Assembly: GCF_006345805.1 (NCBI RefSeq) | Contig: NC_043004.1 | Span: forward strand, 101,928,001-101,992,000 | Length of the DNA stretch: 64,000 nucleotides | DNA from: Octopus sinensis | Taxonomy: Eukaryota | Reading direction: 5' to 3' | Shown here: positions 40,877-64,000 of the stretch, piece after piece | Position numbering within the stretch: the stretch's first letter is position 1 | How the letters are laid out: each line of letters opens with the position of its first letter | Program-made: the position numbers and the translations under genes | Notes under the pieces: generated by a model | The model's database searches: none | What the model saw: only the letters and a program-made list of their open reading frames with translations | Told to the model about the DNA's origin: nothing

Positions 40877-40902
40877 TAATAATAATAATAATGATAATAA
40901 TG

Positions 40903-40954
<52 letters not shown>

Positions 40955-41185
40955 TGATGATGATAATAATGATGATAATAATAATAATGATGATAATAAT
41001 AATAATAACAATATTAATAATAATAATAATAATAATAAAAGCTGGTGGATACATAAGGTTGCAGATGGTAACTTGCTACCCACACAAATCCTTCAGGAAT
41101 AAGACTAAACCTGAGTCAAATCAATAATAATAATAATAATAATAACAATAACAATAATAATAATAATAATAACAATAACAATAAC

Positions 41186-41226
<41 letters not shown>

Positions 41227-45531: not shown

Positions 45532-45604
<73 letters not shown>

Positions 45605-46228
45605 GTGTGTGTTTGTGTCTGTGTTTGTCCCCACAACATCGCTTGACAACCGATGTTGGTGCGTTTACGTCCCCGTAACTTAGCGGTTCGGCAAAAGTGA
45701 CCGACAGAATAAGTACTAGGCTTACAAAAAATAAGTCCTGTGGTCGATTTGCTCGACTAAAAAGGCGGTGCTCCAGCATGGCCGCAATCAAATGACTGAA
45801 ACAAGTAAAAGAGTAATTATTTTTGCATGTGGTGTTTGAATGGAATTTCTGTGTGTTTTGACGTTTCATCATTCGACCTCATTTCAGTCAAGATCCTGGC
45901 AGATTAAGACATACTGGAAACGTTCTGCTATTTAATTCAACCGTCCTCGGTGTTACTCGTTGTGAAAGAGAGCGAGAAAACGTGTAGTGGTCGTAAGGCT
46001 TCGTTCGTCTTTGATTTTTTTGTTCGCGGCATTGCTAAACTTCTCTCCTTTCAAGCAACATCCTAAGAACTTAGCTATAATTTAGCCTAGTTGATTTATC
46101 CTACACAGAAATGTATCATAGGAGAGGCCACCCTCCGAGTAATTGTGTGTATGTATGTATGTATCTATGTATCTATGTATGGGCGTGTATATATATATTT
46201 GTGTATGTATATGTGCATCATGTGTGTG

Positions 46229-46260
<32 letters not shown>

Positions 46261-47421
46261 TGTATGTATGCATGCATGTATGTATGTATGTATGTATGTA
46301 TGTATGTATGTATGTATGTATGTATGTATGCATGTATGTATGTATGCATGTATGCATGTATGTATGTATGCATGTATGTATGTATGTATGTATGTATGTA
46401 TGCATGTATGCATGTATGCATGTATGCATGTATGTATGTATGTATGTATGTATGTGTGTATGTATGTGAATGTATGTGGTTGCAAACATTGAAAGGGATG
46501 TTTCTATAATTATTTTTCCAGTTTCAAAACTATATTGGTGAGGAAATTACTAGCCAGGAAATATAAATTCAATAACTTGAAGACCGAACAGCTCCTTCAT
46601 CGAAGACCTTTTTACATCTGTTCGATTCGTTCTCAGACGATATTAAACTGTACGTGTTCCTATGTTCTAATTTATATCTCGAAATCACTTCGTTAAATTA
46701 GATTCTCTACTGTGACAACTCCGTTTTCTTTTCTGTCATATTTATATTCTAGGCTCAACTGGTTATACAGTATTCTCATCAAAGTTTGAAATGGAAGAAA
46801 AAATTTTGAGGGAAAGTCGGGAACTATTTCTAGCAAGTTATGCTACCATATAGATGTATAGTTCTTTACTGTTTGCATATCAGTATCCCTACCAAGGTAT
46901 TGGTGGTTTTACAAGTTTTCAACGCAATTTTGTAGAAATATAAAAGAATATTATAATAACAGCTGCTGGCCTTGTGCTAAAGTTTGAAACCAATATTCAT
47001 ACGGACAAACTGTAACATCTCAACATAGTTGTTCGCCAGCCCCTAGCTACACCCTGCTTTAGATAAGATGAAATAGCCATGGCTAGAACGCCTTTAATCA
47101 TAGGTTTGTTCAATGAAAGCCAACCTGAAGCCAAACAACCAACAATAAAACCGTCTCAACAACTAAGGACATTTTGAGGTGTCTGAAGTGATGAAAAAAA
47201 TAGCAAAATATTAGCAATAAAGGAAAGCATATTGGTCTTACGCCTCCTCCGATCGCCCATGCGTAGAAAACACTCCTGCAGTGTGTCCAATCAAATGCCA
47301 TATTTGGTAGGTAGCATTCGTTCTCGGTGGTAAGATTCGCCGAAATGTTCAGCCTGAAGCATTCGTATAGCAGCATATGATGTACAAACATCTCGTTGCC
47401 CTTTTGTATCTTTGGTGACAC
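15468..47421 (-). CDS. MOXD1: Spliced gene (5'-partial): DBH-like monooxygenase, MOXD1-like; 10 exons, 1152 nt = 383 aa + stop
   Basis: Manual exon chaining with GT-AG sites and matching phases: 47242-47421, 43085-43187, 40656-40840, 40359-40562, 35637-35696, 25500-25621, 24772-24883, 21850-21927, 16642-16698, 15468-15518. Motifs [53 protein letters not shown] and [12 protein letters not shown] match MOXD1 better than DBH/TBH (recalled family motifs). Orthology versus a lineage-specific paralogue is not resolved. Confidence 0.88.
16160..16495 (-). mobile_element. CORE-type tRNA SINE
   Basis: Same family as 1484-1890, 3'-truncated. Confidence 0.85.
16642..16698 (-). CDS. Probable MOXD1-like C-terminal exon
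   Basis: atttattttctag|TCT...ACG|gtaagt, 57 nt, phase 0/0: [19 protein letters not shown]. Strong splice sites, weak homology support. Confidence 0.55.
16866..17175 (+). mobile_element. tRNA SINE (OR1-like head) with tail type B
   Basis: Same head; tail ctgcgatggactggcgtcctgtccagc...gaaactgggaaaccgggcccatgagcc...gacttt. Confidence 0.8.
18075..18410 (-). mobile_element. (TA)n-flanked Penelope pLTR-like/retrozyme-like element
   Basis: About 340 bp non-coding, bounded by (TA)n on both sides, containing a hammerhead-like motif. Confidence 0.55.
18207..18244 (-). ncRNA. Minimal hammerhead motif (A6U variant)
   Basis: UCUUU-CUGUUGA-A-GAGC[GUAG]GCUC-GAAAC-GUA/AAAGA. Confidence 0.62.
19230..20940 (+). 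mobile_element. Degraded RTE LINE (APE + N-terminal RT)
   Basis: [68 protein letters not shown]. Stops, an internal EN deletion, and a 3' end cut at the mariner junction. Confidence 0.93.
20940..21560 (-). mobile_element. Mariner 5' half (HTH region)
   Basis: [26 protein letters not shown]; [42 protein letters not shown]. Confidence 0.9.
21850..21927 (-). CDS. Probable MOXD1-like C-terminal exon
   Basis: ttttattttatag|ATT...AAG|gttcgt, 78 nt, phase 0/0: [26 protein letters not shown]. An alternative donor (gtaatg) lies 8 nt further. Confidence 0.6.
24400..24630 (-). mobile_element. Third SINE family (gcctttcatcctttcgggg central domain)
   Basis: Full copy with an 18-bp TSD tatgtaaatataaatact (24381-24398 / 24634-24651). 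Degenerate copies lie near 22770-23190, 34575-34770, 35170-35400, 41270-41470, 44690-44900, 49886-50095 and 58790-58990. Confidence 0.85.
24772..24883 (-). CDS. MOXD1: MOXD1-like C-terminal exon
   Basis: catcgtttag|T CTC...GAG|gtaagt, 112 nt, phase 2/0, which matches the previous exon: [37 protein letters not shown]. Confidence 0.75.
25500..25621 (-). CDS. MOXD1: MOXD1-like exon (CuM Met)
   Basis: ccaatactag|GGC...GGC AA|gtacgt, 122 nt, phase 0/2: [40 protein letters not shown](N). Confidence 0.92.
25630..26540. repeat. (TAA)n arrays flanking an R4/Dong 3' end
   Basis: Directly visible at 25630-25862 and 26077-26540. Confidence 0.95.
25862..26077 (+). mobile_element. R4/Dong-clade LINE 3' end
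   Basis: [33 protein letters not shown], then a 3' UTR ending in (TAA)n. Confidence 0.8.
26539..27050 (+). mobile_element. R4/Dong-clade LINE internal fragment
   Basis: [51 protein letters not shown]. Confidence 0.85.
28500..32210 (+). mobile_element. Near full-length RTE LINE (APE-RT-PHD), inactivated
   Basis: ORFs 28847-30208 and 30274-31677 form one ORF split by a 4-nt deletion at about 30192. Other lesions: in-frame TGA at 28760-28762, YADD read as CDD, GDFN read as GDFK. 3' UTR with (ATG)n tail. The 5' UTR may extend to about 27755. Confidence 0.95.
32200..32616. repeat. TACA/TA compound minisatellite
   Basis: Repeated tacttacatacatacatata-type units. Confidence 0.9.
32615..33352. repeat. 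Direct duplication of about 340 bp (period 399)
   Basis: tattttgtcgggtttgttctgag... starts at 32615 and 33014; copies differ by small indels; (TA)n on both flanks. Confidence 0.92.
33883..34270 (-). mobile_element. tRNA SINE (OR1-like, tail A), full length
   Basis: 10-bp TSD acctatgtgt at 33873-33882 and 34271-34280. Confidence 0.9.
35637..35696 (-). CDS. MOXD1: MOXD1-like exon
   Basis: tctgtttccag|GGA...TAT|gtaagt, 60 nt, phase 0/0: [20 protein letters not shown]. Confidence 0.9.
36140..36450 (+). mobile_element. 5'-truncated RTE (BovB-like) 3' end with C2H2 zinc finger
   Basis: [23 protein letters not shown]...[23 protein letters not shown]; (TTA)n tail; TSD tactgacctc at 36130-36139 and 36451-36460. 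Confidence 0.92.
36500..38945 (-). mobile_element. Ty3/Gypsy (Mag-like) internal remnant
   Basis: Gag [18 protein letters not shown]; [18 protein letters not shown]; protease LDTGSDIT; [31 protein letters not shown]; most of RNase H/integrase missing; PPT-like aaaaggggaga at about 36505-36516. Confidence 0.9.
38334..38717 (+). mobile_element. tRNA SINE (OR1-like, tail A) inserted in Gypsy gag
   Basis: 12-bp TSD acttttaatatc at 38322-38333 and 38718-38729. Confidence 0.93.
40359..40562 (-). CDS. MOXD1: MOXD1-like exon (CuM HxH)
   Basis: ttttcttgtccatttcaaag|AGA...ATG|gtaaga, 204 nt, phase 0/0: [68 protein letters not shown]. The exact acceptor is less certain than the donor. Confidence 0.88.
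40656..40840 (-). CDS. MOXD1: MOXD1-like exon
   Basis: attatag|GC CAT...TTA|gtaagt, 185 nt, phase 1/0: [61 protein letters not shown]. Confidence 0.92.
40842..41260. repeat. (TAA/TGA)n array containing an ~85-bp insert at 41038-41122 (probable R4/Dong 3' end)
   Basis: Array is directly visible; the insert identity is inferred from its (TAA)n context. Confidence 0.75.
41490..41890 (+). mobile_element. R4/Dong-clade RT fragment
   Basis: [56 protein letters not shown]. Confidence 0.82.
43085..43187 (-). CDS. MOXD1: MOXD1-like exon (third CuH His)
   Basis: accttcag|AAA...AAAG|gtatat, 103 nt, phase 0/1: [34 protein letters not shown](G). Confidence 0.92.
45325..45367 (-). ncRNA. Minimal type I hammerhead ribozyme, canonical core
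   Basis: CCAC-CUGAAGA-UUGUC[GAUCAA]GACAA-GAAAC-AAUU-GUA/GUGG. Confidence 0.85.
45403..45444 (+). ncRNA. Minimal type I hammerhead ribozyme, inverted twin
   Basis: CAC-CUGAAGA-UUGUC[GAUCAA]GACAA-GAAAC-AAUU-GUA/GUG. Confidence 0.82.
46145..46470. repeat. (TATG)n/(CATG) microsatellite
   Basis: Directly visible. Confidence 0.95.
47242..47421 (-). CDS. MOXD1: MOXD1-like exon (CuH His-His)
   Basis: ttttatcag|GTG...GGC|gtaaga, 180 nt, phase 0/0: [60 protein letters not shown]. Confidence 0.93.
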
Positions 47422-47496
47422 CTGATAAAAGATTTGAACCGAAATTGTTTATAAAAACGCATAAGAATAAAGAAAGTAAATAAAAAGTGTTAAATA

Positions 47497-47860
47497 GGTG
47501 TAGGAGTGGGTGTGTGGTAAGTAGCTTGCTTATTGACCACGTGGTTCGGTGTTCAGTCTCACTGCGGGGCAACTTAAGCACTTCTGCTATAACCTCGGAC
47601 CGACCAAAGCTTTGTGAATGGATTTGGTAGACGGAAACTGAAAGAAAGCCCGTCGTATATACGTGTGTGTTTGTGCGTGTGTGTTTGCCCCCAACACCAT
47701 TGCTTAACAACCGATGTTGGTACATTCACGATCCCGTAACTTTGCTGTTCGGCTAGAGAAACTAGGCTTACAAAGAATAAGTCCTGGGGCCGATTTGTTC
47801 GACTAAAGGCGGTGCTCCAGCATGGCTGCAGTCATATGAATGAAACAAATAAATGAATAA
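47497..47860 (+). mobile_element. CORE-type SINE
   Basis: Same family as 1484-1890. Confidence 0.85.
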
Positions 47861-47918
47861 AAGAATAAAACAATTTTATGCGTAAACGGTATGTATAATA
47901 TTTCTCTTTTATTTTTTT

Positions 47919-48279
47919 CTCTTTTACTTGTTTCAGTCATTTGACTGCGGCCATGCTGGAGCACAGGCTTTAGTCGAGCAAATCGACTCCAGGACTTATT
48001 CTTTGTAAGCCTAACTTACGGGGACGTAAACACACCAATGTTGGTTGTCAAGTAATGTTGGGGGAGATGCAACAAACACAGACACAAACACATACACACA
48101 CATACATATATATACATATATACGATGGGCTTCTTTCAGTTTCCGTCTACCAAATCCACTCACAAGGCTTTGGTCGGCCCGACGCTATAGTAGAAGACAC
48201 TTGCCCAAGGTGCCACGCAGTGGGACTGAACCCGGAACCATGTGGTTGATAAGCAAGCTACTTACCACACAGCCACTCC
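47919..48279 (-). mobile_element. CORE-type SINE (inverted neighbour of 47497-47860)
   Basis: Reverse-complement family match. Confidence 0.85.
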
Positions 48280-48797: not shown

Positions 48798-50325
48798 TAC
48801 ATAGTAAATAAGTATATATATTAGACAGTCTTCTATATAAGATCTATTTGATATAGTTTATAATGCACACGCAGCGAAAACTAGAAGAAAATATGAATAC
48901 CATTTGTTAGGAGTTTACCGTGGCGTGTCTCAGGGCAGATTGGCTATTATTCGTTAATCTTGTCTTAAACGTCTGAAATATTTGTTCTAGTATCAGCACA
49001 ATCGGGACGGATTAATGGTAGAGTATTGGATAAAACATTTTGGTCAATTTTGTCACGTTTCTTTTATTTTCTGAGTTAAAAAATACCATCCATAATCTAT
49101 TTGTTCTGCCATAGAACCGGGGTTTTACCCGGTTTCCATGACATATAAATGACTGAGATTGCAGCACAACCTTCTGAACGGGACGCTAGTCCGTCGCAGG
49201 GTTAACTTCCCAGTTACTACTACGGCTCATTTACAGCTGAGCGAACTGGGGCGGCGTGATATTAAATGTCCAGTTCGGGAATTGAAACCATGATCGTTAG
49301 AGAAACACCTTAAGACCTGATCACTAAGTGACGCGCCTTCACAATAAAATAGGTAACAGTTGATAGAATATAAAAAGATATTGCAATAGATGTAATATAC
49401 CCTAAAATGTGGAGGCGCAATGGCTGAGTGTTTATTGAGCGAAAACACCTAAAGCTCCACGAGGCTCCGGCAGGGGATGGTGGTGATCCCTGCTGTACTC
49501 TTTCACCACAACTTTCTCTCACTCTTACTTCCTGTTTCTGTTATACCTGTATTTCAAGGGGCCGGCCTTGTCACTCTCTGTGTCACGCTGAATATCCCCG
49601 AGAACTACGTTAAGGGTACACGTGTCTGTGGAGTGCTCAGCCACTTACACGTTAATTTCACGAGCAGGCTGTTCCGTTGATTCAGATCAACTGGAACCCT
49701 CGTCGTCGTAACCGACGGAGTGCTTCCATCCAATTCACAACCTCACGATCATAAGCTCGACGCACTAACTACTGAGCCATGCGCCTTCACTGAGCCATGT
49801 GATCAACTGATTATTAATTGAAGAAATAGAAAAAAATTATAATGAATGTTTTTTTATTTTTTATTTTAATGAACTGTTATGAATAAGGCAGCGAGCTGGC
49901 AGAATCGTGTGCATGCCGGACAAAATGCAAAGCAGTATTTCGTCCATATTTAGTTCTTAATTCAAATTCCGCTGAGGTCGCCTTTACCTTTCATCCTTTC
50001 GGAGTAAATAAGTACCAATCAAACACTGGTATCGATGTATTCGACTCACCCTTCCCTAAAATTACTAACCTTGTGCCAAAAATTTGAAGCCAATATCTTG
50101 TTATGAATAAATATCAGACGCTATCAAAGTAGGATCCCTGCACACGAAAGAATGCCTTCGGTAATTCACGAAGTTATACAAAGCAATTTTCAAGGGTGAA
50201 CAATTGGGTCAGCAACTAAATTTAAGATCTTTTCAAATAATGTTACTATGCTTACAAACACTGTAAGATATGTTCTAATTGTTTATTTCCACGCATTGAT
50301 TCACTTGTTATATAATACACAGGCG

Positions 50326-50712
50326 TGGAGGCGCAATGGCCCAGTGGTTAGGGCAGCGGACTCGCGGTCATAGGATCGCGGTTTCGATTCCCAGAAGAGC
50401 GTTCTGAGTGTTTATTGAGCGAAAACACCTAAAAGCTCCACGAGGCTCCGGCAGGGGATGGTGGTGATCCCTGCTGTACTCTTTCACCACAACTTTCTCT
50501 CACTCTTACTTGCTGTTTCTGTTGTACCTGTATTTCAAAAGGCCGGCCTTGTCACTCTCTGTGTCACGCTGAATATCCCCGAGAACTACGTTAAGGGTAC
50601 ACGTGTCTGTGGAGTGCTCAGCCACTTACACGTTAATTTCCCGAGCAGGCTGTTCCGTTGATTCGGATCAACCGGAACCCTCGTCGTCGTAACCGACGGA
50701 GTGCTTCCATCC
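50326..50712 (+). mobile_element. OR1-like SINE of array unit 1
   Basis: 12-bp TSD aatacacaggcg at 50314-50325 and 50713-50724; inserted at the head of an older CORE-SINE (50720-51030). Confidence 0.9.
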
Positions 50713-51362
50713 AATACACAGGCGCAGACATAGCAGTGTAGTTAAGAAGTTCGCTTTGTAACCACATAGTTTTGGGTTCAATCCCATTAAATGACACCTT
50801 AGACAAATTTCATCTAGAATACCCCAGCTGTGTTTGCGTTTGTCCTTCACCCTTACTTCTTGACAACAAAATTTGGGTTTGATTATGTCCCCGCAATTTA
50901 GCGGCTCGGCAAAGAAGAACGATAGGAAAAGTAGCAGACTTTAAAAGTACTGGGGTTAGTTTGTCCGACTATACCCGCTAAAGTGGTGTCCCAGAATGGC
51001 TGCAATTCACTCAGTGAAACACGTGAAAATTATAAAGTAAATATCCTCGACTTATCTAAAATGGCAGACAAAATTATTTATTGTATTTGGCTCAGCATTT
51101 TTGAGGAAAAACTTCACCTGCTCTGATAGCATTTAAAACCAAGTATTGAAATAAATATTTATGTATAGATTTCGTTTGTCCATAAATAATTTGAAATAAA
51201 TTTCTCTCATAAAAATATATTTTGTACTAAATTTCTATGTACGCATTCTGATTTGATTTATAACTATAACTCATGCTTTCCCCCACCCCCATTATACGTT
51301 TAAATGAGTAAGTGTGTTTTGAAACCCAAAAAAGAAGTAAAAATAAGAAATAATGTATTTAT

Positions 51363-52307
51363 ATACGAGAGGGTATCCAAAAGTAACTGAAAACGTTCTC
51401 TGTGGGAAAATCCGGTTGCAGTTCATGCTTCCACCGCTAGAAGCCACTTGATGCGACCCTTAGGCATCAGTCTCTCAACTGGTGTCATCGAGTGAAATCC
51501 TACTGCTATGTGGTATGTTTTTGTTTTGCAGTGCTTCTCCCCTGTTCATCGATTTTTGCTACGGCTGAAACGAAGGGACAGCGCGCTTCCGTGAAATTCT
51601 GTTTCCTTCTGGGCAAAACGGGCGGCCGAAACAGTTGTCATGCTTTAAACAGCTTACAGAGACGCTGCCATGAGCAAAACACAAGTTTACGAGTGGTTTT
51701 CACGCTTTAGGAATGGTCACTTATCGCTTGAAGACCAACCTCGTTCAGGGCGACCGTCGAACTCCCGAACAAATGAAAACATCACCTTCATGAACTGATC
51801 TTGGAGGATTGTCACTGAACAATTGACGAACTTATTGATATGACTAATGTGTCCTGCAGCGCCTGCCAACGAATTTTGAGCGAGGAATTGCGAATGAAAA
51901 GAGTTGCAGCAAAATTTGTGCCTCACTTGTTCACGGAAGATCAAATGCAGCCATGACTGAATGCGTGTAAAGAACTGAAAGAACAGTTGATAGTTGATCT
52001 GAACTTTTTTTTTTTTAAGCTCATTACTGGTGATTGAAGCTGCTGCTACAGCTAAGACCCGGAAACGAAGCAGCAATCAGGTCAATGGAAATATTCAATG
52101 TCAACACGTACCCAAAAAGTACATCAAGTGAAGTCCATTAAGACGATGCTGATTTGTTTCATCGATGCGAAAGGAATTGTCAAACAGTTAACCAGGCATT
52201 TTACTTGGCAGTTCTGAAGCGTTTGCAAGACACGGCGAGGAGTAAATTCCCCGACCAGTGGCAAAGTGGAGAGTAGTGGTTTCATTACGACAATGCACCT
52301 TCGCACA
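51363..52307 (+). mobile_element. Pseudogenised mariner (5' TIR to HYDNAPSH) in each array unit
   Basis: TA-flanked tacgagagggtatccaaaagt start; QRASVKFCFLLGK, QVYEWFSRFRNG, EDQPRSGRP, MKRVAAKFVP, ITGD*, DNAPSH. Truncated at the unit junction. Confidence 0.92.
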
Positions 52308-55300
52308 GGAGGCGCAATGGCCCAGTGGTTAGGGCAGCGGACTCGCGGTCATAGGATCGCGGTTTCGATTCCCAGACCGGGCGTTCTGAGTGTTTATTGA
52401 GCGAAAACACCTAAAAGCTCCACGAGGCTCCGGCAGGGATGGTGGTGATCCCTGCTGTACTCTTTCACCACAACTTTCTCTCACTCTTACTTGCTGTTTC
52501 TGTTGTACCAGTATTTCAAAAGGCCGGCCTTGTCACTCTCTGTGTCACGCTGAATATCCCCGAGAACTACGTTAAGGGTACACGTGTCTGTGGAGTGCTC
52601 AGCCACTTACACGTTAATTTCCCGAGCAGGCTGTTCCGTTGATTCGGATCAACCGGAACCCTCGTCGTCGTAACCGACGGAGTGCTTCCATCCAATACAC
52701 AGGCGCAGACATAGCAGTGTAGTTAAGAAGTTCGCTTTGTAACCACATAGTTTTGGGTTCAATCCCATTAAATGACACCTTAGACAAATTTCATCTAGAA
52801 TACCCCAGCTGTGTTTGCGTTTGTCCTTCACCCTTACTTCTTGACAACAAAATTTGGGTTTGATTATGTCCCCGCAATTTAGCGGCTCGGCAAAGAAGAA
52901 CGATAGGAAAAGTAGCAGACTTTAAAAGTACTGGGGTTAGTTTGTCCGACTATACCCGCTAAAGTGGTGTCCCAGAATGGCTGCAATTCACTCAGTGAAA
53001 CACGTGAAAATTATAAAGTAAATATCCTCGACTTATCTAAAATGGCAGACAAAATTATTTATTGTATTTGGCTCAGCATTTTTGAGGAAAAACTTCACCT
53101 GCTCTGATAGCATTTAAAACCAAGTATTGAAATAAATATTTATGTATAGATTTCGTTTGTCCATAAATAATTTGAAATAAATTTCTCTCATAAAAATATA
53201 TTTTGTACTAAATTTCTATGTACGCATTCTGATTTGATTTATAACTATAACTCATGCTTTCCCCCACCCCCATTATACGTTTAAATGAGTAAGTGTGTTT
53301 TGAAACCCAAAAAAGAAGTAAAAATAAGAAATAATGTATTTATATACGAGAGGGTATCCAAAAGTAACTGAAAACGTTCTCTGTGGGAAAATCCGGTTGC
53401 AGTTCATGCTTCCACCGCTAGAAGCCACTTGATGCGACCCTTAGGCATCAGTCTCTCAACTGGTGTCATCGAGTGAAATCCTACTGCTATGTGGTATGTT
53501 TTTGTTTTGCAGTGCTTCTCCCCTGTTCATCGATTTTTGCTACGGCTGAAACGAAGGGACAGCGCGCTTCCGTGAAATTCTGTTTCCTTCTGGGCAAAAC
53601 GGGCGGCCGAAACAGTTGTCATGCTTTAAACAGCTTACAGAGACGCTGCCATGAGCAAAACACAAGTTTACGAGTGGTTTTCACGCTTTAGGAATGGTCA
53701 CTTATCGCTTGAAGACCAACCTCGTTCAGGGCGACCGTCGAACTCCCGAACAAATGAAAACATCACCTTCATGAACTGATCTTGGAGGATTGTCACTGAA
53801 CAATTGACGAACTTATTGATATGACTAATGTGTCCTGCAGCGCCTGCCAACGAATTTTGAGCGAGGAATTGCGAATGAAAAGAGTTGCAGCAAAATTTGT
53901 GCCTCACTTGTTCACGGAAGATCAAATGCAGCCATGACTGAATGCGTGTAAAGAACTGAAAGAACAGTTGATAGTTGATCTGAACTTTTTTTTTTTTGAA
54001 GCTCATTACTGGTGATTGAAGCTGCTGCTACAGCTAAGACCCGGAAACGAAGCAGCAATCAGGTCAATGGAAATATTCAATGTCAACACGTACCCAAAAA
54101 GTACATCAAGTGAAGTCCATTAAGACGATGCTGATTTGTTTCATCGATGCGAAAGGAATTGTCAAACAGTTAACCAGGCATTTTACTTGGCAGTTCTGAA
54201 GCGTTTGCAAGACACGGCGAGGAGTAAATTCCCCGACCAGTGGCAAAGTGGAGAGTAGTGGTTTCATTACGACAATGCACCTTCGCACAGGAGGCGCAAT
54301 GGCCCAGTGGTTAGGGCAGCGGACTCGCGGTCATAGGATCGCGGTTTCGATTCCCAGACCGGGCGTTCTGAGTGTTTATTGAGCGAAAACACCTAAAAGC
54401 TCCACGAGGCTCCGGCAGGGATGGTGGTGATCCCTGCTGTACTCTTTCACCACAACTTTCTCTCACTCTTACTTGCTGTTTCTGTTGTACCAGTATTTCA
54501 AAAGGCCGGCCTTGTCACTCTCTGTGTCACGCTGAATATCCCCGAGAACTACGTTAAGGGTACACGTGTCTGTGGAGTGCTCAGCCACTTACACGTTAAT
54601 TTCCCGAGCAGGCTGTTCCGTTGATTCGGATCAACCGGAACCCTCGTCGTCGTAACCGACGGAGTGCTTCCATCCAATACACAGGCGCAGACATAGCAGT
54701 GTAGTTAAGAAGTTCGCTTTGTAACCACATAGTTTTGGGTTCAATCCCATTAAATGACACCTTAGACAAATTTCATCTAGAATACCCCAGCTGTGTTTGC
54801 GTTTGTCCTTCACCCTTACTTCTTGACAACAAAATTTGGGTTTGATTATGTCCCCGCAATTTAGCGGCTCGGCAAAGAAGAACGATAGGAAAAGTAGCAG
54901 ACTTTAAAAGTACTGGGGTTAGTTTGTCCGACTATACCCGCTAAAGTGGTGTCCCAGAATGGCTGCAATTCACTCAGTGAAACACGTGAAAATTATAAAG
55001 TAAATATCCTCGACTTATCTAAAATGGCAGACAAAATTATTTATTGTATTTGGCTCAGCATTTTTGAGGAAAAACTTCACCTGCTCTGATAGCATTTAAA
55101 ACCAAGTATTGAAATAAATATTTATGTATAGATTTCGTTTGTCCATAAATAATTTGAAATAAATTTCTCTCATAAAAATATATTTTGTACTAAATTTCTA
55201 TGTACGCATTCTGATTTGATTTATAACTATAACTCATGCTTTCCCCCACCCCCATTATACGTTTAAATGAGTAAGTGTGTTTTGAAACCCAAAAAAGAAG

Positions 55301-58300
55301 TAAAAATAAGAAATAATGTATTTATATACGAGAGGGTATCCAAAAGTAACTGAAAACGTTCTCTGTGGGAAAATCCGGTTGCAGTTCATGCTTCCACCGC
55401 TAGAAGCCACTTGATGCGACCCTTAGGCATCAGTCTCTCAACTGGTGTCATCGAGTGAAATCCTACTGCTATGTGGTATGTTTTTGTTTTGCAGTGCTTC
55501 TCCCCTGTTCATCGATTTTTGCTACGGCTGAAACGAAGGGACAGCGCGCTTCCGTGAAATTCTGTTTCCTTCTGGGCAAAACGGGCGGCCGAAACAGTTG
55601 TCATGCTTTAAACAGCTTACAGAGACGCTGCCATGAGCAAAACACAAGTTTACGAGTGGTTTTCACGCTTTAGGAATGGTCACTTATCGCTTGAAGACCA
55701 ACCTCGTTCAGGGCGACCGTCGAACTCCCGAACAAATGAAAACATCACCTTCATGAACTGATCTTGGAGGATTGTCACTGAACAATTGACGAACTTATTG
55801 ATATGACTAATGTGTCCTGCAGCGCCTGCCAACGAATTTTGAGCGAGGAATTGCGAATGAAAAGAGTTGCAGCAAAATTTGTGCCTCACTTGTTCACGGA
55901 AGATCAAATGCAGCCATGACTGAATGCGTGTAAAGAACTGAAAGAACAGTTGATAGTTGATCTGAACTTTTTTTTTTTTGAAGCTCATTACTGGTGATTG
56001 AAGCTGCTGCTACAGCTAAGACCCGGAAACGAAGCAGCAATCAGGTCAATGGAAATATTCAATGTCAACACGTACCCAAAAAGTACATCAAGTGAAGTCC
56101 ATTAAGACGATGCTGATTTGTTTCATCGATGCGAAAGGAATTGTCAAACAGTTAACCAGGCATTTTACTTGGCAGTTCTGAAGCGTTTGCAAGACACGGC
56201 GAGGAGTAAATTCCCCGACCAGTGGCAAAGTGGAGAGTAGTGGTTTCATTACGACAATGCACCTTCGCACAGGAGGCGCAATGGCCCAGTGGTTAGGGCA
56301 GCGGACTCGCGGTCATAGGATCGCGGTTTCGATTCCCAGACCGGGCGTTCTGAGTGTTTATTGAGCGAAAACACCTAAAAGCTCCACGAGGCTCCGGCAG
56401 GGATGGTGGTGATCCCTGCTGTACTCTTTCACCACAACTTTCTCTCACTCTTACTTGCTGTTTCTGTTGTACCAGTATTTCAAAAGGCCGGCCTTGTCAC
56501 TCTCTGTGTCACGCTGAATATCCCCGAGAACTACGTTAAGGGTACACGTGTCTGTGGAGTGCTCAGCCACTTACACGTTAATTTCCCGAGCAGGCTGTTC
56601 CGTTGATTCGGATCAACCGGAACCCTCGTCGTCGTAACCGACGGAGTGCTTCCATCCAATACACAGGCGCAGACATAGCAGTGTAGTTAAGAAGTTCGCT
56701 TTGTAACCACATAGTTTTGGTTCAATCCCATTAAATGACACCTTAGACAAATTTCATCTAGAATACCCCAGCTGTGTTTGCGTTTGTCCTTCACCCTTAC
56801 TTCTTGACAACAAAATTTGGGTTTGATTATGTCCCCGCAATTTAGCGGCTCGGCAAAGAAGAACGATAGGAAAAGTAGCAGACTTTAAAAGTACTGGGGT
56901 TAGTTTGTCCGACTATACCCGCTAAAGTGGTGTCCCAGAATGGCTGCAATTCACTCAGTGAAACACGTGAAAATTATAAAGTAAATATCCTCGACTTATC
57001 TAAAATGGCAGACAAAATTATTTATTGTATTTGGCTCAGCATTTTTGAGGAAAAACTTCACCTGCTCTGATAGCATTTAAAACCAAGTATTGAAATAAAT
57101 ATTTATGTATAGATTTCGTTTGTCCATAAATTTTGAAATAAATTTCTCTCATAAAAAATATTTTGTACTAAATTTCTATGTACGCATTCTGATTTGATTT
57201 ATAACTATAACTCATGCTTTCCCCCCCCACCCCCATTATACGTTTAAATGAGTAAGTGTGTTTTGAAACCCAAAAAAGAAGTAAAAATAAGAAATAATGT
57301 ATTTATATACGAGAGGGTATCCAAAAGTAACTGAAAACGTTCTCTGTGGGAAAATCCGGTTGCAGTTCATGCTTCCACCGCTAGAAGCCACTTGATGCGA
57401 CCCTTAGGCATCAGTCTCTCAACTGGTGTCATCGAGTGAAATCCTACTGCTATGTGGTATGTTTTTGTTTTGCAGTGCTTCTCCCCTGTTCATCGATTTT
57501 TGCTACGGCTGAAACGAAGGGACAGCGCGCTTCCGTGAAATTCTGTTTCCTTCTGGGCAAAACGGGCGGCCGAAACAGTTGTCATGCTTTAAACAGCTTA
57601 CAGAGACGCTGCCATGAGCAAAACACAAGTTTACGAGTGGTTTTCACGCTTTAGGAATGGTCACTTATCGCTTGAAGACCAACCTCGTTCAGGGCGACCG
57701 TCGAACTCCCGAACAAATGAAAACATCACCTTCATGAACTGATCTTGGAGGATTGTCACTGAACAATTGACGAACTTATTGATATGACTAATGTCCCTGC
57801 AGCGCCTGCCAACGAATTTTGAGCGAGGAATTGCGAATGAAAAGAGTTGCAGCAAAATTTGTGCCTCACTTGTTCACGGAAGATCAAATGCAGCCATGAC
57901 TGAATGCGTGTAAAGAACTGAAGAACAGTTGATAGTTGATCTGAACTTTTTTTTTTTTGAAGCTCATTACTGGTGATTGAAGCTGCTGCTACAGCTAAGA
58001 CCCGGAAACGAAGCAGCAATCAGGTCAATGGAAATATTCAATGTCAACACGTACCCAAAAAGTACAATCAAGTGAAGTCCATTAAGACGATGCTGATTTG
58101 TTTCATCGATGCGAAAGGAATTGTCAAACAGTTAACCAGGCATTTTACTTGGCAGTTCTGAAGCGTTTGCAAGACACGGCGAGGAGTAAATTCCCCGACC
58201 AGTGGCAAAGTGGAGAGTAGTGGTTTCATTACGACAATGCACCTTCGCACAGGAGGCGCAATGGCCCAGTGGTTAGGGCAGCGGACTCGCGGTCATAGGA

Positions 58301-61300
58301 TCGCGGTTTCGATTCCCAGACCGGGCGTTCTGAGTGTTTATTGAGCGAAAACACCTAAAAGCTCCACGAGGCTCCGGCAGGGATGGTGGTGATCCCTGCT
58401 GTACTCTTTCACACACAACTTTCTCTCACTCTTACTTGCTGTTTCTGTTGTACCAGTATTTCAAAAGGCCGGCCTTGTCACTCTCTGTGTCACGCTGAAT
58501 ATCCCCGAGAACTACGTTAAGGGTACACGTGTCTGTGGAGTGCTCAGCCACTTACACGTTAATTTCCCGAGCAGGCTGTTCCGTTGATTCGGATCAACCG
58601 GAACCCTCGTCGTCGTAACCGACGGAGTGCTTCCATCCAATTCACAACCTCGCGATCATAAGCTCGACGCACTAACCACTGAGCCATGCGCCTTCACTGA
58701 GCCATGTGATCAACTGATTATTAATTGAAGAAATAGAAAAAATTATAATGAATTTTTTTATTTTTTATTTTAATGAACTGTTTGAATAAGCCAGCGCTGG
58801 CAGAATCGTGTGCATGCCGGACAAAATGCAAAGCAGTATTTCGTCCATATTTAGTTCTTAATTCAAATTCCGCTGAGGTCGCCTTTACCTTTCATCCTTT
58901 CGGAGTAAATAAGTACCAATCAAACACTGGTATCGATGTATTCGACTCACCCTTCCCTAAATTTACTAACCTTGTGCCAAAAATTTGAAGCCAATATCTT
59001 GTTATAATAAATATCAGACGCTATCAAAGTAGAAAGTCCCTGCACACGTAAGAATGCCTTCGGTAATTCACGAAGTTATACAAAGCAATTTTCAAGGGTG
59101 AACAATTGGGTCAGCAACTAAACTTAAGATCTTTTCAAATAATGTTACTATGCTTACAAACACTGTAAGATATGTTCTAATTGTTTATTTCCACGCATTC
59201 ATTCACTTGTTATATAATACACAGGCGTGGAGGCGCAATGGCCCAGTGGTTAGGGCAGCGGACTCGCGGTCATAGGATCGCGGTTTCGATTCCCAGACCG
59301 AGCGTTCTGAGTGTTTATTGAGCGAAAACACCTAAAAGCTCCACGAGGGTCCGGCAGGGATGGTGGTGATCCCTGCTGTACTCTTTCACCACAACTTTCT
59401 CTCACTCTTACTTCCTGTTTCTGTTGTACCTGTATTTCAAAAGGCCGGCCTTGTCACTCTCTGTGTCACGCTGAATATCCCGATAACTACGTTAAGGGTA
59501 CACGTGTCTGTGGAGTGCTCAGCCACTTACACGTTAATTTCCCGAGCAGGCTGTTCCGTTGATTCGGATCAACCGGAACCCTCGTCGTCGTAACGCGCGA
59601 CGGAGTGCTTCCATCCAATACACAGCGCAGACATAGCAGTGTAGTTAAGAAGTTCGCTTTGTAACCACATAGTTTTGGGTTCAATCCCATTAAATGACAC
59701 CTTAGACAAATTTCATCTAGAATACCCCAGCTGTGTTTGCGTTTGTCCTTCACCCTTACTTCTTGACAACAAAATTGGGTTTGATTATGTCCCCGCAATT
59801 TAGCGGCTCGGCAAAGAAGAACGATAGGAAAAGTAGCAGACTTTAGAAGTACTGGGGTTAGTTTGTCCGACTATACCCGCTAAAGTGGTTCCCAGAATGG
59901 CTGCAATTCACTCAGTGAAACACGTGAAAATTATAAAGTAAATATCCTCGACTTATCTAAAATGGCAGACAAAATTATTTATTGTATCTGGCTCAGCATT
60001 TTGAGGAAAAACTTCACCTGCTCTGATAGCATTTAAAACCAAGTATTGAAATAAATATTTATGTATAGATTTCGTTTGTCCATAAATAATTTGAAATAAA
60101 TTCTCTCATAAAAATTATTTTGTACTAAATTTCTATGTACGCATTCTGATTTGATTTATAACTATAACTCATGCTTTCCCCCACCCCCATTATACGTTTA
60201 AATGAGTAAGTGTGTTTTGAAACCCAAAAAAGAAGTAAAAATAAGAAATATGTATTTATATACGAGAGGGTATCCAAAAGTAACTGAAAACGTTCTCTGT
60301 GGGAAAATCCGGTTGCAGTTCATGCTTCCACCGCTAGAAGCCACTTGATGCGACCCTTAGGCATCAGTCTCTCAACTGGTGTCATCGAGTGAAATCCTAC
60401 TGCTATGTGGTATGTTTTTGTTTTGCAGTGCTTCTCCCCTGTTCATCGATTTTTGCTACGGCTGAAACGAAGGGACAGCGCGCTTCCGTGAAATTCTGTT
60501 TCCTTCTGGGCAAAACGGGCGGCCGAAACAGTTGTCATGCTTTAAACAGCTTACAGAGACGCTGCCATGAGCAAAACACAAGTTTACGAGTGGTTTTCAC
60601 GCTTTAGGAATGGTCACTTATCGCTTGAAGACCAACCTCGTTCAGGGCGACCGTCGAACTCCCGAACAAATGAAAACATCACCTTCATGAACTGATCTTG
60701 GAGGATTGTCACTGAACAATTGACGAACTTATTGATATGACTAATGTGTCCTGCAGCGCCTGCCAACGAATTTTGAGCGAGGAATTGCGAATGAAAAGAG
60801 TTGCAGCAAAATTTGTGCCTCACTTGTTCACGGAAGATCAAATGCAGCCATGACTGAATGCGTGTAAAGAACTGAAAGAACAGTTGATAGTTGATCTGAA
60901 CTTTTTTTTTTAAAGCTCATTACTGGTGATTGAAGCTGCTGCTACAGCTAAGACCCGGAAACGAAGCAGCAATCAGGTCAATGGAAATATTCAATGTCAA
61001 CACGTACCCAAAAAGTACATCAAGTGAAGTCCATTAAGACGATGCTGATTTGTTTCATCGATGCGAAAGGAATTGTCAAACAGTTAACCAGGCATTTTAC
61101 TTGGCAGTTCTGAAGCGTTTGCAAGACACGGCGAGGAGTAAATTCCCCGACCAGTGGCAAAGTGGAGAGTAGTGGTTTCATTACGACAATGCACCTTCGC
61201 ACAGGAGGCGCAATGGCCCAGTGGTTAGGGCAGCGGACTCGCGGTCATAGGATCGCGGTTTCGATTCCCAGACCGGGCGTTCTGAGTGTTTATTGAGCGA

Positions 61301-64000
61301 AAACACCTAAAAGCTCCACGAGGCTCCGGCAGGGATGGTGGTGATCCCTGCTGTACTCTTTCACCACAACTTTCTCTCACTCTTACTTGCTGTTTCTGTT
61401 GTACCAGTATTTCAAAAGGCCGGCCTTGTCACTCTCTGTGTCACGCTGAATATCCCCGAGAACTACGTTAAGGGTACACGTGTCTGTGGAGTGCTCAGCC
61501 ACTTACACGTTAATTTCCCGAGCAGGCTGTTCCGTTGATTCGGATCAACCGGAACCCTCGTCGTCGTAACCGACGGAGTGCTTCCATCCAATACACAGGC
61601 GCAGACATAGCAGTGTAGTTAAGAAGTTCGCTTTGTAACCACATAGTTTTGGGTTCAATCCCATTAAATGACACCTTAGACAAATTTCATCTAGAATACC
61701 CCAGCTGTGTTTGCGTTTGTCCTTCACCCTTACTTCTTGACAACAAAATTTGGGTTTGATTATGTCCCCGCAATTTAGCGGCTCGGCAAAGAAGAACGAT
61801 AGGAAAAGTAGCAGACTTTAAAAGTACTGGGGTTAGTTTGTCCGACTATACCCGCTAAAGTGGTGTCCCAGAATGGCTGCAATTCACTCAGTGAAACACG
61901 TGAAAATTATAAAGTAAATATCCTCGACTTATCTAAAATGGCAGACAAAATTATTTATTGTATTTGGCTCAGCATTTTTGAGGAAAAACTTCACCTGCTC
62001 TGATAGCATTTAAAACCAAGTATTGAAATAAATATTTATGTATAGATTTCGTTTGTCCATAAATAATTTGAAATAAATTTCTCTCATAAAAATATATTTT
62101 GTACTAAATTTCTATGTACGCATTCTGATTTGATTTATAACTATAACTCATGCTTTCCCCCACCCCCATTATACGTTTAAATGAGTAAGTGTGTTTTGAA
62201 ACCCAAAAAAGAAGTAAAAATAAGAAATAATGTATTTATATACGAGAGGGTATCCAAAAGTAACTGAAAACGTTCTCTGTGGGAAAATCCGGTTGCAGTT
62301 CATGCTTCCACCGCTAGAAGCCACTTGATGCGACCCTTAGGCATCAGTCTCTCAACTGGTGTCATCGAGTGAAATCCTACTGCTATGTGGTATGTTTTTG
62401 TTTTGCAGTGCTTCTCCCCTGTTCATCGATTTTTGCTACGGCTGAAACGAAGGGACAGCGCGCTTCCGTGAAATTCTGTTTCCTTCTGGGCAAAACGGGC
62501 GGCCGAAACAGTTGTCATGCTTTAAACAGCTTACAGAGACGCTGCCATGAGCAAAACACAAGTTTACGAGTGGTTTTCACGCTTTAGGAATGGTCACTTA
62601 TCGCTTGAAGACCAACCTCGTTCAGGGCGACCGTCGAACTCCCGAACAAATGAAAACATCACCTTCATGAACTGATCTTGGAGGATTGTCACTGAACAAT
62701 TGACGAACTTATTGATATGACTAATGTGTCCTGCAGCGCCTGCCAACGAATTTTGAGCGAGGAATTGCGAATGAAAAGAGTTGCAGCAAAATTGTGTGCC
62801 TCACTTGTTCACGGAAGATCAAATGCAGCCATGACTGAATGCGTGTAAAGAACTGAAAGAACAGTTGATAGTTGATCTGAACTTTTTTTTTTTTGAAGCT
62901 CATTACTGGTGATTGAAGCTGCTGCTACAGCTAAGACCCGGAAACGAAGCAGCAATCAGGTCAATGGAAATATTCAATGTCAACACGTACCCAAAAAGTA
63001 CATCAAGTGAAGTCCATTAAGACGATGCTGATTTGTTTCATCGATGCGAAAGGAATTGTCAAACAGTTAACCAGGCATTTTACTTGGCAGTTCTGAAGCG
63101 TTTGCAAGACACGGCGAGGAGTAAATTCCCCGACCAGTGGCAAAGTGGAGAGTAGTGGTTTCATTACGACAATGCACCTTCGCACAGGAGGCGCAATGGC
63201 CCAGTGGTTAGGGCAGCGGACTCGCGGTCATAGGATCGCGGTTTCGATTCCCAGACCGGGCGTTCTGAGTGTTTATTGAGCGAAAACACCTAAAAGCTCC
63301 ACGAGGCTCCGGCAGGGATGGTGGTGATCCCTGCTGTACTCTTTCACCACAACTTTCTCTCACTCTTACTTGCTGTTTCTGTTGTACCAGTATTTCAAAA
63401 GGCCGGCCTTGTCACTCTCTGTGTCACGCTGAATATCCCCGAGAACTACGTTAAGGGTACACGTGTCTGTGGAGTGCTCAGCCACTTACACGTTAATTTC
63501 CCGAGCAGGCTGTTCCGTTGATTCGGATCAACCGGAACCCTCGTCGTCGTAACCGACGGAGTGCTTCCATCCAATACACAGGCGCAGACATAGCAGTGTA
63601 GTTAAGAAGTTCGCTTTGTAACCACATAGTTTTGGGTTCAATCCCATTAAATGACACCTTAGACAAATTTCATCTAGAATACCCCAGCTGTGTTTGCGTT
63701 TGTCCTTCACCCTTACTTCTTGACAACAAAATTTGGGTTTGATTATGTCCCCGCAATTTAGCGGCTCGGCAAAGAAGAACGATAGGAAAAGTAGCAGACT
63801 TTAAAAGTACTGGGGTTAGTTTGTCCGACTATACCCGCTAAAGTGGTGTCCCAGAATGGCTGCAATTCACTCAGTGAAACACGTGAAAATTATAAAGTAA
63901 ATATCCTCGACTTATCTAAAATGGCAGACAAAATTATTTATTGTATTTGGCTCAGCATTTTTGAGGAAAAACTTCACCTGCTCTGATAGCATTTAAAACC

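What the first reader, a model, noticed from the sequence alone, without database searches (positions are those of the whole stretch)
49409..64000. Macrosatellite built from dead TEs, with a higher-order repeat
Seen: a unit of 1975-1983 bp = OR1-like SINE + old CORE-SINE + AT spacer + truncated mariner. Four units are followed by a return of the ~0.95-kb spacer S, then at least 2.4 more units (higher-order period 8902 bp). The first unit of each block shares diagnostic variants (gtacctgtat versus gtaccagtat; poly-T followed by aagctc without G), so the 8.9-kb duplication post-dates divergence of unit 1. Inference: a very young, probably copy-number-variable array 5' of the first detected MOXD1-like exon, likely intronic because the DOMON exons were not found.
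Basis: partly seen in the sequence, partly recalled or inferred. Interest (0 to 1): 0.7.

Follow-up and report, generated by a model that had tools for sequence, protein, structure and literature searches.

The report
SINE-bounded tandem array in octopus intron
A 2-kb stretch of dead transposon fragments has been copied head-to-tail at least six times inside an intron of an octopus DBH-like monooxygenase gene, probably by recombination between copies of one young SINE. It is a clean but ordinary example of how satellite DNA is born, and part of it may be an assembly artefact.

Summary
From 49409 to the window end there are 6.4 head-to-tail units of 1975-1983 bp. They are interrupted once by a second copy of a ~0.6-kb spacer, which gives an 8.9-kb second-order period seen 1.6 times.

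Each unit contains a young tRNA-like SINE, an old SINE, an AT-rich spacer, and a mariner that stops at Mos1 residue 254.

The array lies in an intron of at least 16.6 kb of the Octopus sinensis "DBH-like monooxygenase protein 1 homolog" gene (minus strand). The exons for aa 1-258 are not in the window.

New here:
- Unit boundaries coincide with the SINE 5' end.
- The first SINE keeps a 12-bp target-site duplication.
- The 8.9-kb junction is an in-register hybrid SINE, with the switch inside a 42-bp interval at the SINE 3' end.

This points to recurrent SINE-SINE unequal recombination.

Caveats:
- A 4.2-kb stretch (56.72-60.91 kb) that spans the junction is full of 1-bp indels.
- The two spacer copies differ by 1.4% in substitutions, while interior units are identical.
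- So the second-order block could be a merge artefact.
- This is not a classical higher-order repeat.

Verdict: new member of a known kind (TE-derived composite tandem repeat), low to moderate interest.

The parts
49409..49728 (+). SINE' : leftmost copy of the young SINE family. It has a ~65-bp internal deletion of the tRNA-like part and is 96.5-97.2% identical to the unit SINEs.
49729..50326 (+). Spacer S, copy 1. It starts with the flank TCCAATTCACAACCTC and a reversed tRNA-like head. Positions 141-368 are an old interspersed repeat. It ends with AATACACAGGCG (50314-50325), the upstream target-site duplication of the first unit's SINE.
50327..52307 (+). Unit A1 (1981 bp). Contents: SINE 50327-50709, tail TCC, downstream TSD 50713-50724, old SINE ~50721-51068, AT-rich spacer ~51069-51364, and mariner 51365-52307 (TIR-like ACGAGAGGGTATCCAAAAGTAAC at the start, ending at ...DNAPSH).
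52308..54289 (+). Unit A2 (1982 bp), equal to the array consensus.
54290..56271 (+). Unit A3 (1982 bp), identical to A2.
56272..58251 (+). Unit A4 (1980 bp). It has 7 indel events and 1 substitution against the consensus, all from 56718 onward.
58252..58635 (+). Hybrid SINE H. It has the mariner-type 5' junction and is unit-type at all 10 diagnostic sites. It then switches to the SINE' flank. The crossover lies between 58599 and 58642.
58636..59228 (+). Spacer S, copy 2. It differs from copy 1 by 8 substitutions and 6 indel events.
59229..61203 (+). Unit B1 (1975 bp). It shares A73, T204 and loss of the G after the poly-T with A1. It also carries 6 private substitutions and 10 indel events, the last at 60912.
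61204..63186 (+). Unit B2 (1983 bp), equal to A2 plus one G.
63187..64000 (+). Unit B3, cut by the window end. Identical to A2 over 814 bp.
56718..60912 (.). Stretch with a high density of 1-bp indels, mostly deletions in short homopolymers. It spans the block junction. It is probably low-quality consensus.
47242..47424 (-). Nearest exon of the DBH-like monooxygenase 1 homolog gene: aa 259-319, the copper-binding HHM motif, Cu2_monooxygen profile positions 37-96. The array lies in the intron 5' of it.

Best explanation
This is a non-coding tandem amplification with no indicated function. It sits in an intron of the Octopus sinensis (or very close relative) DBH-like monooxygenase protein 1 homolog gene. 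It was generated by repeated unequal homologous recombination between same-orientation copies of one young tRNA-like SINE.

Proposed history
1. The progenitor locus was a patch of old transposon debris: spacer S, an old SINE, AT-rich DNA and a mariner. [shown]
2. Young SINE copies then landed in it in the same orientation.
   - SINE' lies left of S. [shown]
   - SINEa landed between S and the old SINE, and its 12-bp target-site duplication is still intact. [shown]
   - SINEb probably landed inside the mariner, just after the codons for DNAPSH. [inferred]
3. Misaligned exchange between SINEa and SINEb duplicated the 1.98-kb segment between them. [inferred]
4. Further unequal exchange expanded and homogenised the array. 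[inferred]
5. A later exchange between an interior SINE and SINE' produced the in-register hybrid SINE H. This re-inserted S and gave the 8.9-kb second-order block. [H is shown in the sequence; that it exists in the animal is inferred]
For: - Unit boundaries fall exactly at the SINE 5' end (GGAGGCGCAATGG) in all 6 junctions.
- A1's SINE is flanked by AATACACAGGCG on both sides (50314-50325 and 50713-50724). So S and the old SINE were once contiguous.
- Two dispersed copies of the same SINE (38336-38716 +, 33886-34272 -) have their own TSDs and are 94-96% identical. The family is therefore mobile and young.
- 5 of the 6 positions where A1 differs from the consensus lie in the 5' half of its SINE (alignment columns 70-204). 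The binomial P is 0.007 for the SINE as a whole. This is what a SINEa/SINEb hybrid predicts.
- H is unit-type at 10 diagnostic sites. It then carries the SINE' flank after a 42-bp interval of identity.
- The mariner aligns to Mos1 residues 48-254 of 345 and stops at the second catalytic Asp motif. No mariner C-terminal motif occurs elsewhere in the window.
- Interior units are 100% identical over 6.8 kb in total.
- The array region has no Rfam hit, no notable inverted repeat and no tRNA call.
- NAHR and microhomology repair are the published routes from transposons to tandem arrays (PMC9659126, PMC12628747).
Against: - The unit junction lacks the GT that precedes GGAGGCG in the four independent SINE copies. 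A breakpoint 2 nt inside SINEa is therefore equally possible.
- A1 and the interior units share a private G at column 187 that no other family copy has, while B1 has the ancestral C. The variant pattern is mosaic.
- The far end of the array, which would show SINEb's own flank, is outside the window.
- The junction H/S2 sits in the middle of a 4.2-kb stretch of error-like indels.
- S1/A1 and S2/B1 differ by 0.62% in substitutions with transitions:transversions = 6:8, while interior units differ by nothing.
- No reads, second individual or sister-species DNA could be reached.
Confidence: 0.5

Rival explanations
1. The 1.98-kb array is real, but the 8.9-kb second-order block is an assembly artefact. 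A second contig or haplotig, starting in SINE' and carrying S plus the first units, was merged in register with a contig that ended in an array SINE. Alternatively, a gap was filled with poorly polished long-read sequence. S2/B1 would then be the other allele, or an error-laden copy, of S1/A1.
For: - The error-like stretch 56718-60912 flanks the junction on both sides, as expected for two low-coverage contig ends. It is dominated by 1-bp deletions in short homopolymers.
- S1/A1 versus S2/B1 differ by 0.62% in substitutions with ts:tv 6:8, whereas interior units are identical.
- The O. sinensis chromosome assembly has 5.2% duplicated BUSCOs against 0.4-0.5% for two of the other octopus assemblies in the same table (PMC10700109).
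- Only 1.6 copies of the block are seen.
Against: - The junction is an intact, in-register hybrid SINE with the switch inside only 42 bp of identity. That is what homologous exchange gives, and it is an unlikely overlap for a long-read assembler.
- The A4 part of the low-quality stretch has 7 indels but only 1 substitution, where 9.5 are expected at the S2/B1 density (Poisson P 8e-4). So the S2/B1 substitutions are not the same error process, and S2/B1 is a distinct molecule.
- B1 carries the ancestral C at SINE column 187. A random error would produce that with a probability of about 0.01 (my estimate).
- There are no N's in the window.
Confidence: 0.33
2. The first duplication was not SINE-SINE recombination. 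It was a microhomology-mediated tandem duplication (replication slippage, template switch or end joining) of a segment running from 2-5 nt inside the single SINEa to a point inside the mariner. Only the later expansion and the 8.9-kb step used homology.
For: - The junction ...TTCGCACAGG|AGGCGCAATGG lacks the leading GT(GG) of the SINE and shows AGG/GG microhomology.
- A1 and the interior units share the private G at column 187.
- There is no direct evidence of a second SINE insertion.
- Microhomology repair is a recognised route to first duplications (PMC12628747, PMC9659126).
Against: - A random breakpoint landing within 5 bp of a SINE terminus has a prior of about 0.5% in a 2-kb unit.
- The differences between A1 and the interior units are concentrated in the SINE 5' half (P 0.007), as expected for two different insertions.
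- Small 5' truncations are common in retroposed copies (general knowledge).
Confidence: 0.3
3. The whole array is an assembly expansion of a single-copy SINE-X-mariner segment.
For: Perfect identity of A2, A3 and B3 is what over-polishing or read recycling could give.
Against: - The mariner-to-SINE junction cannot exist in a single-copy locus. It occurs six times, three of them in clean sequence.
- A1 differs from the interior units at defined sites.
- The copy number may be wrong, but at least one duplication is needed to create the junction.
Confidence: 0.04
4. The array is a functional element, for example an intronic regulatory macrosatellite, a small-RNA source, or a modulator of splicing of the adjacent exon.
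For: - It lies 2 kb from the exon that carries the copper-binding HHM motif.
- The O. vulgaris gene model skips exactly that exon.
- Some macrosatellites in other animals have chromatin roles (general knowledge).
Against: - The unit has no conserved ORF, no Rfam family and no hairpin.
- All its parts are decayed transposons.
- The skipped exon may be an annotation matter.
- No expression or conservation data were reachable.
Confidence: 0.04

Closest known systems
Composite satellite monomers from 'transposon graveyards' (Satovic-Vuksic, Majcen & Plohl 2025, PMC12628747)
   Same: The monomer is a mosaic of fragments of several unrelated, degraded transposons that were tandemised as one block.
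   Different: - It lies in a gene intron, not in heterochromatin.
- It has only about 6-7 copies.
- Its parts and junctions are still fully recognisable.
- A young SINE marks the unit boundary, which suggests the mechanism.
SINE/Alu-mediated non-allelic homologous recombination giving tandem duplications (reviewed in PMC9659126)
   Same: Direct repeats of a young SINE a few kb apart act as recombination substrates. The junction is a hybrid SINE in register.
   Different: - The process was reiterated to give an array plus a second-order block, not a single duplication.
- The homology at the second-order junction is short (42 bp).
- The first step could instead be microhomology-mediated.
Tandem TE dimers by double insertion, expanding to satellites (McGurk & Barbash 2018, PMC5932611)
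   Same: It is a young, low-copy tandem array derived from transposons and seen before it becomes a satellite.
   Different: - The unit is not one TE inserted into itself.
- It is a 2-kb multi-element segment.
- No TSD-sized junction between identical elements is seen.
Macrosatellites of vertebrates such as D4Z4, DXZ4, RS447 (general knowledge)
   Same: It has a kilobase-scale unit, a head-to-tail array and high inter-unit identity. It is expected to vary in copy number.
   Different: - It contains no gene or CpG island.
- The copy number is much lower.
- Polymorphism and chromatin state are unknown.
Higher-order repeats of alpha satellite (general knowledge)
   Same: A multi-unit block is itself repeated.
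   Different: - In alpha satellite, monomers within a block differ by 20-40% and blocks are nearly identical.
- Here the monomers are 99.7-100% identical.
- The block-specific parts (S and unit 1) are the most divergent.
- Only 1.6 blocks are seen.

Membership tests
Macrosatellite / long-unit tandem repeat | Unit of about 1 kb or more, repeated head to tail | tested here: met
   There are six full units of 1975-1983 bp plus a partial one.
Macrosatellite / long-unit tandem repeat | Copy number varies between individuals | not testable with these tools
   No reads or second assembly were reachable.
Higher-order repeat (classical sense) | Blocks of several diverged monomers, with block-to-block identity much higher than monomer-to-monomer identity | tested here: not met
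   Interior monomers are 100% identical to each other. Block A versus block B is 99.1% overall, and about 97.5% in S and 99% in unit 1.
Higher-order repeat (classical sense) | The block is repeated several times | tested here: inconclusive
   Only 1.64 periods of 8.9 kb fit before the window ends.
TE-derived composite tandem repeat | The monomer consists of recognisable fragments of more than one transposon family | tested here: met
   - The young SINE has TSDs and dispersed copies.
- The second element is 62-72% similar to the abundant SINE copies in the window.
- The mariner matches Mos1 (E 1.1e-12) and HTH_48 (28.6 bits against a 24.1 cut-off).
tRNA-derived SINE | Dispersed copies bounded by target-site duplications | tested here: met
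   - d38k has TSD ACTTTTAATAT.
- d34k has TSD ACACATAGGT.
- A1 has TSD AATACACAGGCG.
tRNA-derived SINE | 5' part recognisable as a tRNA (cloverleaf, A and B boxes) | tested here: inconclusive
   - A-box-like TGGCCCAGTGG and B-box-like GGTTTCGATTCC can be read directly.
- ARAGORN finds nothing at default settings or at ps90, and only a poor pseudo-tRNA at ps80.
- There is no Rfam tRNA hit at E<=1.
   No Repbase, Dfam or SINEBase library is available. A paper search for OR1/OR2 with octopus found nothing.
mariner (Tc1/mariner superfamily) | Transposase with Mos1-type HTH and DD(34)D catalytic domain | tested here: met
   - It aligns to Mos1 residues 48-254 with several frameshifts and stops.
- It reaches the DNAPSH motif of the second Asp.
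- The third Asp region is missing.
- Pfam Transposase_1 is only weak: 16.9 bits against a 24 cut-off.
mariner (Tc1/mariner superfamily) | Terminal inverted repeats flanked by a TA duplication | tested here: inconclusive
   Only a 5' TIR-like sequence preceded by TATATA is present (51365). The 3' end is not in the window.
DBH-like monooxygenase 1 (MOXD1) gene | Exons matching the annotated orthologue, with DOMON + Cu2_monooxygen + Cu2_monoox_C architecture | tested here: met
   - The window's exons match O. sinensis XP_029640196.2 aa 259-666 at 100% in clean exons.
- The protein carries the three Pfam domains.
- The exon at 47242-47424 hits Cu2_monooxygen at E 1.4e-13.

The most novel reading that the evidence does not exclude
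The array and its 8.9-kb block are both real, arose after the O. sinensis / O. vulgaris split, and vary in copy number. The locus would then be a satellite caught at birth in euchromatin. Every step would still be legible: the SINE insertions with a TSD, the first duplication, homogenisation of interior units with divergent edge units, and a first higher-order step through a hybrid SINE. That would be a worked example of the recently proposed origin of composite satellite monomers, and a possible structural modifier of a neural monooxygenase gene.
Probability: 0.4. Interest if true: 0.4.

Novelty: new member of a known kind. Interest (0 to 1): 0.25.

Why it matters
Tandem arrays made from transposons are common, and the routes to them (NAHR, microhomology repair) are already described.

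The value of this locus is illustrative:
- Its parts are young enough that the target-site duplication, the unit junction and the hybrid SINE at the second-order junction can all be read directly.
- It lies in an annotated gene of a model cephalopod, so it can be typed easily by PCR or read depth.

It is also a practical warning for users of this assembly. A 4.2-kb low-quality stretch and a possible false duplication sit 9-13 kb from an exon that the O. vulgaris gene model skips.

Tried and rejected
- TRF cannot see periods above 500 bp. The repeat finder and self-BLAST were used instead.
- The SINE head was checked with ARAGORN and Rfam. There was no call at normal thresholds, so 'tRNA-derived' rests on reading the boxes.
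- Rfam hits at 47802-47974 (MIR6027 at 44 bits against 95, and others) are sub-threshold matches to an AT-rich hairpin and were rejected.
- The search for homologous proteins with the 59-aa exon found nothing. The exhaustive representative search did find the orthologue.
- I tried several ways to reach independent DNA of this locus:
  - Exact look-ups of nine window ORFs failed.
  - The O. bimaculoides UniRef model also failed.
  - Metagenome scans for the unit junction and for a SINE 35-mer gave 0 hits.
  - So there is no cross-species or read-level test.
- I searched for the missing mariner 3' part and for N-terminal exons in the window. Neither is present.
- I looked for inverted repeats or hairpins in the unit and found none of note.
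- I considered that the array might be a mobile composite element. No other copy of S, the AT spacer or the junction exists in the window, but the rest of the genome could not be searched.
- A paper search for OR1/OR2 octopus SINEs returned nothing.
Full report

Yes. The repeat finder reports families of 6-9 copies with start-to-start spacings of 1981, 1982, 1982, 1980/1981, 1975 and 1983 bp. It also reports two families spaced 8901/8902 bp.

A self-BLAST of the window gives:
- 50327-56665 vs 52308-58646 at 99.70% over 6346 bp;
- 49424-55103 vs 58330-64000 at 99.12% over 5689 bp;
- no N anywhere in the window.

TRF reported nothing only because its longest period is 500 bp.

I delimited the parts as follows:

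| Part | Coordinates | Length |
|---|---|---|
| A1 | 50327-52307 | 1981 bp |
| A2 | 52308-54289 | 1982 bp |
| A3 | 54290-56271 | 1982 bp |
| A4 | 56272-58251 | 1980 bp |
| extra SINE, H | 58252-58635 | |
| second copy of the spacer | 58636-59228 | |
| B1 | 59229-61203 | 1975 bp |
| B2 | 61204-63186 | 1983 bp |
| B3 (cut by the window end) | 63187-64000 | 814 bp |

A2 and A3 are identical. B2 is A2 plus one G. B3 equals A2. Two-kb units at this identity are far beyond chance.

**2. Anatomy of the unit**

*(a) A ~383-bp SINE* (GGAGGCGCAATGG...GGAGTGCTTCCA).
- Two dispersed copies lie at 38336-38716 (+) and 33886-34272 (-). They are 94-96% identical to the array copies.
- Each is bounded by its own target-site duplication: ACTTTTAATAT and ACACATAGGT.
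- A-box-like TGGCCCAGTGG and B-box-like GGTTTCGATTCC can be read.
- ARAGORN and Rfam do not call a tRNA. 'tRNA-derived' is therefore plausible but not demonstrated, and 'OR1-like' could not be tested.

*(b) About 350 bp* that is 62-72% similar to the abundant SINE copies at 1452-1908, 2670-3106, 16157-16504, 45614-45810 and 47491-47869.

*(c) About 300 bp* of AT-rich sequence.

*(d) 943 bp of a decayed mariner.*
- HTH_48 scores 28.6 bits against a cut-off of 24.1.
- A frame-corrected translation aligns to Mos1 transposase residues 48-254 of 345 at E 1.1e-12. It ends exactly at DNAPSH, the motif of the second catalytic Asp.
- Pfam Transposase_1 is only weak.

*The spacer S.*
- It begins with a reversed tRNA-like head.
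- Its positions 141-368 belong to yet another old interspersed family, with at least six copies in the window.

*The leftmost element* (49409-49728) is the same young SINE with a ~65-bp internal deletion of the tRNA-like part.

So 'built from dead TEs' is correct.

**3. Genomic context**

The ORF at 47110-47421 (-) hits Cu2_monooxygen positions 37-96 at E 1.4e-13.

An exhaustive search found a 663-aa protein that is 98% identical over the exon. This protein and its cluster mates are 'DBH-like monooxygenase protein 1 homolog' of O. bimaculoides (XP_014787901.1) and O. sinensis (XP_029640196.2).

tblastn places aa 259-666 of the O. sinensis protein on the minus strand from 47424 down to 15957, at 100% identity in the cleanly aligned exons.

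[quoted passage not shown] The window is therefore O. sinensis or something extremely close to it.

No exon for aa 1-262 is detectable between 47000 and 64000, even with very permissive settings. The annotated gene spans 116.6 kb.

The array therefore lies in an intron of at least 16.6 kb, upstream of the exon that carries the HHM copper site.

**4. How it arose**

Three facts can be read directly.

*First, A1 holds an original insertion.* A1's SINE is flanked by AATACACAGGCG at 50314-50325 (the end of S) and at 50713-50724 (the start of the old SINE). S and the old SINE were therefore once contiguous.

*Second, unit boundaries coincide with the SINE 5' end.*
- Every unit junction reads mariner...CCTTCGCACA|GGAGGCGCAATGG.
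- It is 2 nt short of the GT that precedes GGAGGCG in the four independent copies.

*Third, the extra SINE H is a hybrid.*
- It has the mariner-type 5' junction.
- It has the unit-type base at all 10 sites that distinguish unit SINEs from SINE'.
- After a 42-bp interval of identity (between 58599 and 58642) it continues into the 3' flank of SINE' (TCCAATTCACAACCTC) and then into S.
- An in-register hybrid of this kind is the signature of homologous exchange between an array SINE and SINE'.

For the first duplication I favour the same mechanism: a second SINE (SINEb) inserted in the mariner, followed by SINEa x SINEb unequal exchange.
- A random breakpoint would rarely fall at a SINE terminus.
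- 5 of the 6 positions where A1 departs from the consensus lie in the 5' half of its SINE (binomial P 0.007). This is expected if interior SINEs are b/a hybrids.

A microhomology-mediated first step (AGG/GG at the junction) is not excluded. Both routes are established in the literature on transposon-derived tandem repeats (PMC9659126, PMC12628747, PMC5932611).

**5.

- A1 and B1 do share T at column 204, A at column 73, and loss of the G after the poly-T.
- T204 is the ancestral state, since SINE' and both dispersed copies have it. It shows only that the A variant arose in a non-first unit.
- The G after the poly-T restores the mariner reading FLKLITGD (matching Mos1 SFLHRIVTGDE). Its loss in A1 and B1 is therefore derived and does link the two first units.
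- The pattern is not clean, however. B1 has the ancestral C at column 187, where A1 and all other units have G. It also lacks A1's changes at columns 70-71 and 129.
- Gene conversion, or errors in B1, must be invoked to explain this.

**6. Quality and reality of the second-order block**

Deviations from the array consensus per unit:

| Unit | Deviations from consensus |
|---|---|
| A1 | 6 |
| A2 | 0 |
| A3 | 0 |
| A4 | 8 events: 7 indels and 1 substitution |
| B1 | 19 events: 9 substitutions and 10 indels |
| B2 | 1 |
| B3 | 0 |

S1 versus S2 adds 8 substitutions and 6 indel events in 587 bp.

All of these lie between 56718 and 60912. Most indels are 1-bp deletions in short homopolymers, which is typical of weakly polished long-read consensus.

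*Points that favour an artefact:*
- The error-like stretch straddles the H junction. This is what two contig ends merged in register, or a gap fill, would look like.
- The O. sinensis assembly is reported with 5.2% duplicated BUSCOs against 0.4-0.5% for two of the other octopus assemblies in the same table (PMC10700109).
- The transition:transversion ratio of the S2/B1 substitutions is 6:8.

*Points that favour a real second copy:*
- The A4 part of the stretch has only 1 substitution, where 9.5 are expected at the S2/B1 density (P 8e-4). The S2/B1 substitutions are therefore probably real differences.
- B1's ancestral C is unlikely to be an error.
- A join inside 42 bp of identity is not how long-read overlappers fail.

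*My estimates:*
- About 0.55-0.65 that the block exists in the animal.
- About 0.95 that at least a multi-unit array exists. The mariner-to-SINE junction cannot exist without a duplication, and three copies of it lie in clean sequence.

If the block is real, it is not obviously 'very young'. S and unit 1 are the most divergent parts, while interior units are homogenised. That is the usual edge effect in arrays under unequal exchange.

**7. Function**

Nothing suggests one.
- The unit has only decayed reading frames.
- There is no Rfam family in the array.
- There are no notable inverted repeats.

The only hint of consequence is that the O. vulgaris gene model skips exactly the neighbouring exon, and that its gene range is 163 kb against 117 kb in O. 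sinensis. This may be annotation noise.

**8. Comparison with what is known, and verdict**

This is a transposon-derived composite tandem repeat. That kind is reviewed repeatedly, and its 'composite monomer' form was recently given an explicit hypothesis (PMC12628747).

- It works like SINE-mediated NAHR duplication, reiterated.
- It meets the structural definition of a macrosatellite. Its polymorphism is untested.
- It fails the classical definition of a higher-order repeat: monomers are not diverged, and only 1.6 blocks are seen.
- It is a new member of a known kind. It is a neat teaching example, and a caution about this stretch of the assembly.
- Interest: 0.25.

They are listed as next steps.

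Noticed in passing
window 28847-31677 (+): A non-LTR retrotransposon has two long ORFs in different frames. One is 453 aa with a weak endonuclease hit. The other is 467 aa with RVT_1 at E 1.3e-27 plus a PHD finger. It is about one frameshift away from a single EN-RT reading frame. An older fragment of the same family lies at 20096-20527.
   Followed up: partly
window 47242-47424 (-), compared with O. vulgaris protein P0118: The O. vulgaris gene model (GCA_951406725.2) skips exactly this exon, which carries the HHM copper-binding motif and lies next to the array. Its gene range is 162.6 kb, against 116.6 kb in O. sinensis and 123.4 kb in O. bimaculoides.
   Followed up: partly
window 40843-41260 and 46144-46477: A 418-bp (ATA)n microsatellite abuts the splice acceptor of the exon starting at 40841 (-). 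A 334-bp (TGTA)n lies in the next intron.
   Followed up: no
window 47802-47974: An AT-rich hairpin or MITE-like inverted repeat gives sub-threshold Rfam matches (MIR6027 at 44 bits against a gathering score of 95, and Plasmodium RNase P). I judged these to be chance.
   Followed up: partly
window 49729-49739 vs 50710-50720: The 3' flank of SINE' (TCCAATTCACA) resembles the tail plus TSD of the unit SINE (TCCAATACACA), although SINE' has no matching upstream duplication. This could reflect a shared TCC tail and a CACA-rich target preference, or an older duplication. It remains unexplained.
   Followed up: partly
window 59414 (unit B1, SINE column 187): B1 has the family-ancestral C where A1-A4, H, B2 and B3 all have G. 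This makes the variant pattern mosaic. The cause could be gene conversion, a separate lineage, or a lucky error.
   Followed up: partly
window 12813-13350, 13456-13836, 32209-32620, 45214-45555: There are several palindromic or inverted low-complexity blocks (TA/CA-rich, 83-92% arm identity), and a 399-bp tandem duplicate at 32615-33363 (96%).
   Followed up: no
window 36788-37511 (-): A fragment of another retroelement reverse transcriptase is present (RVT_1 at E 7.5e-16).
   Followed up: no
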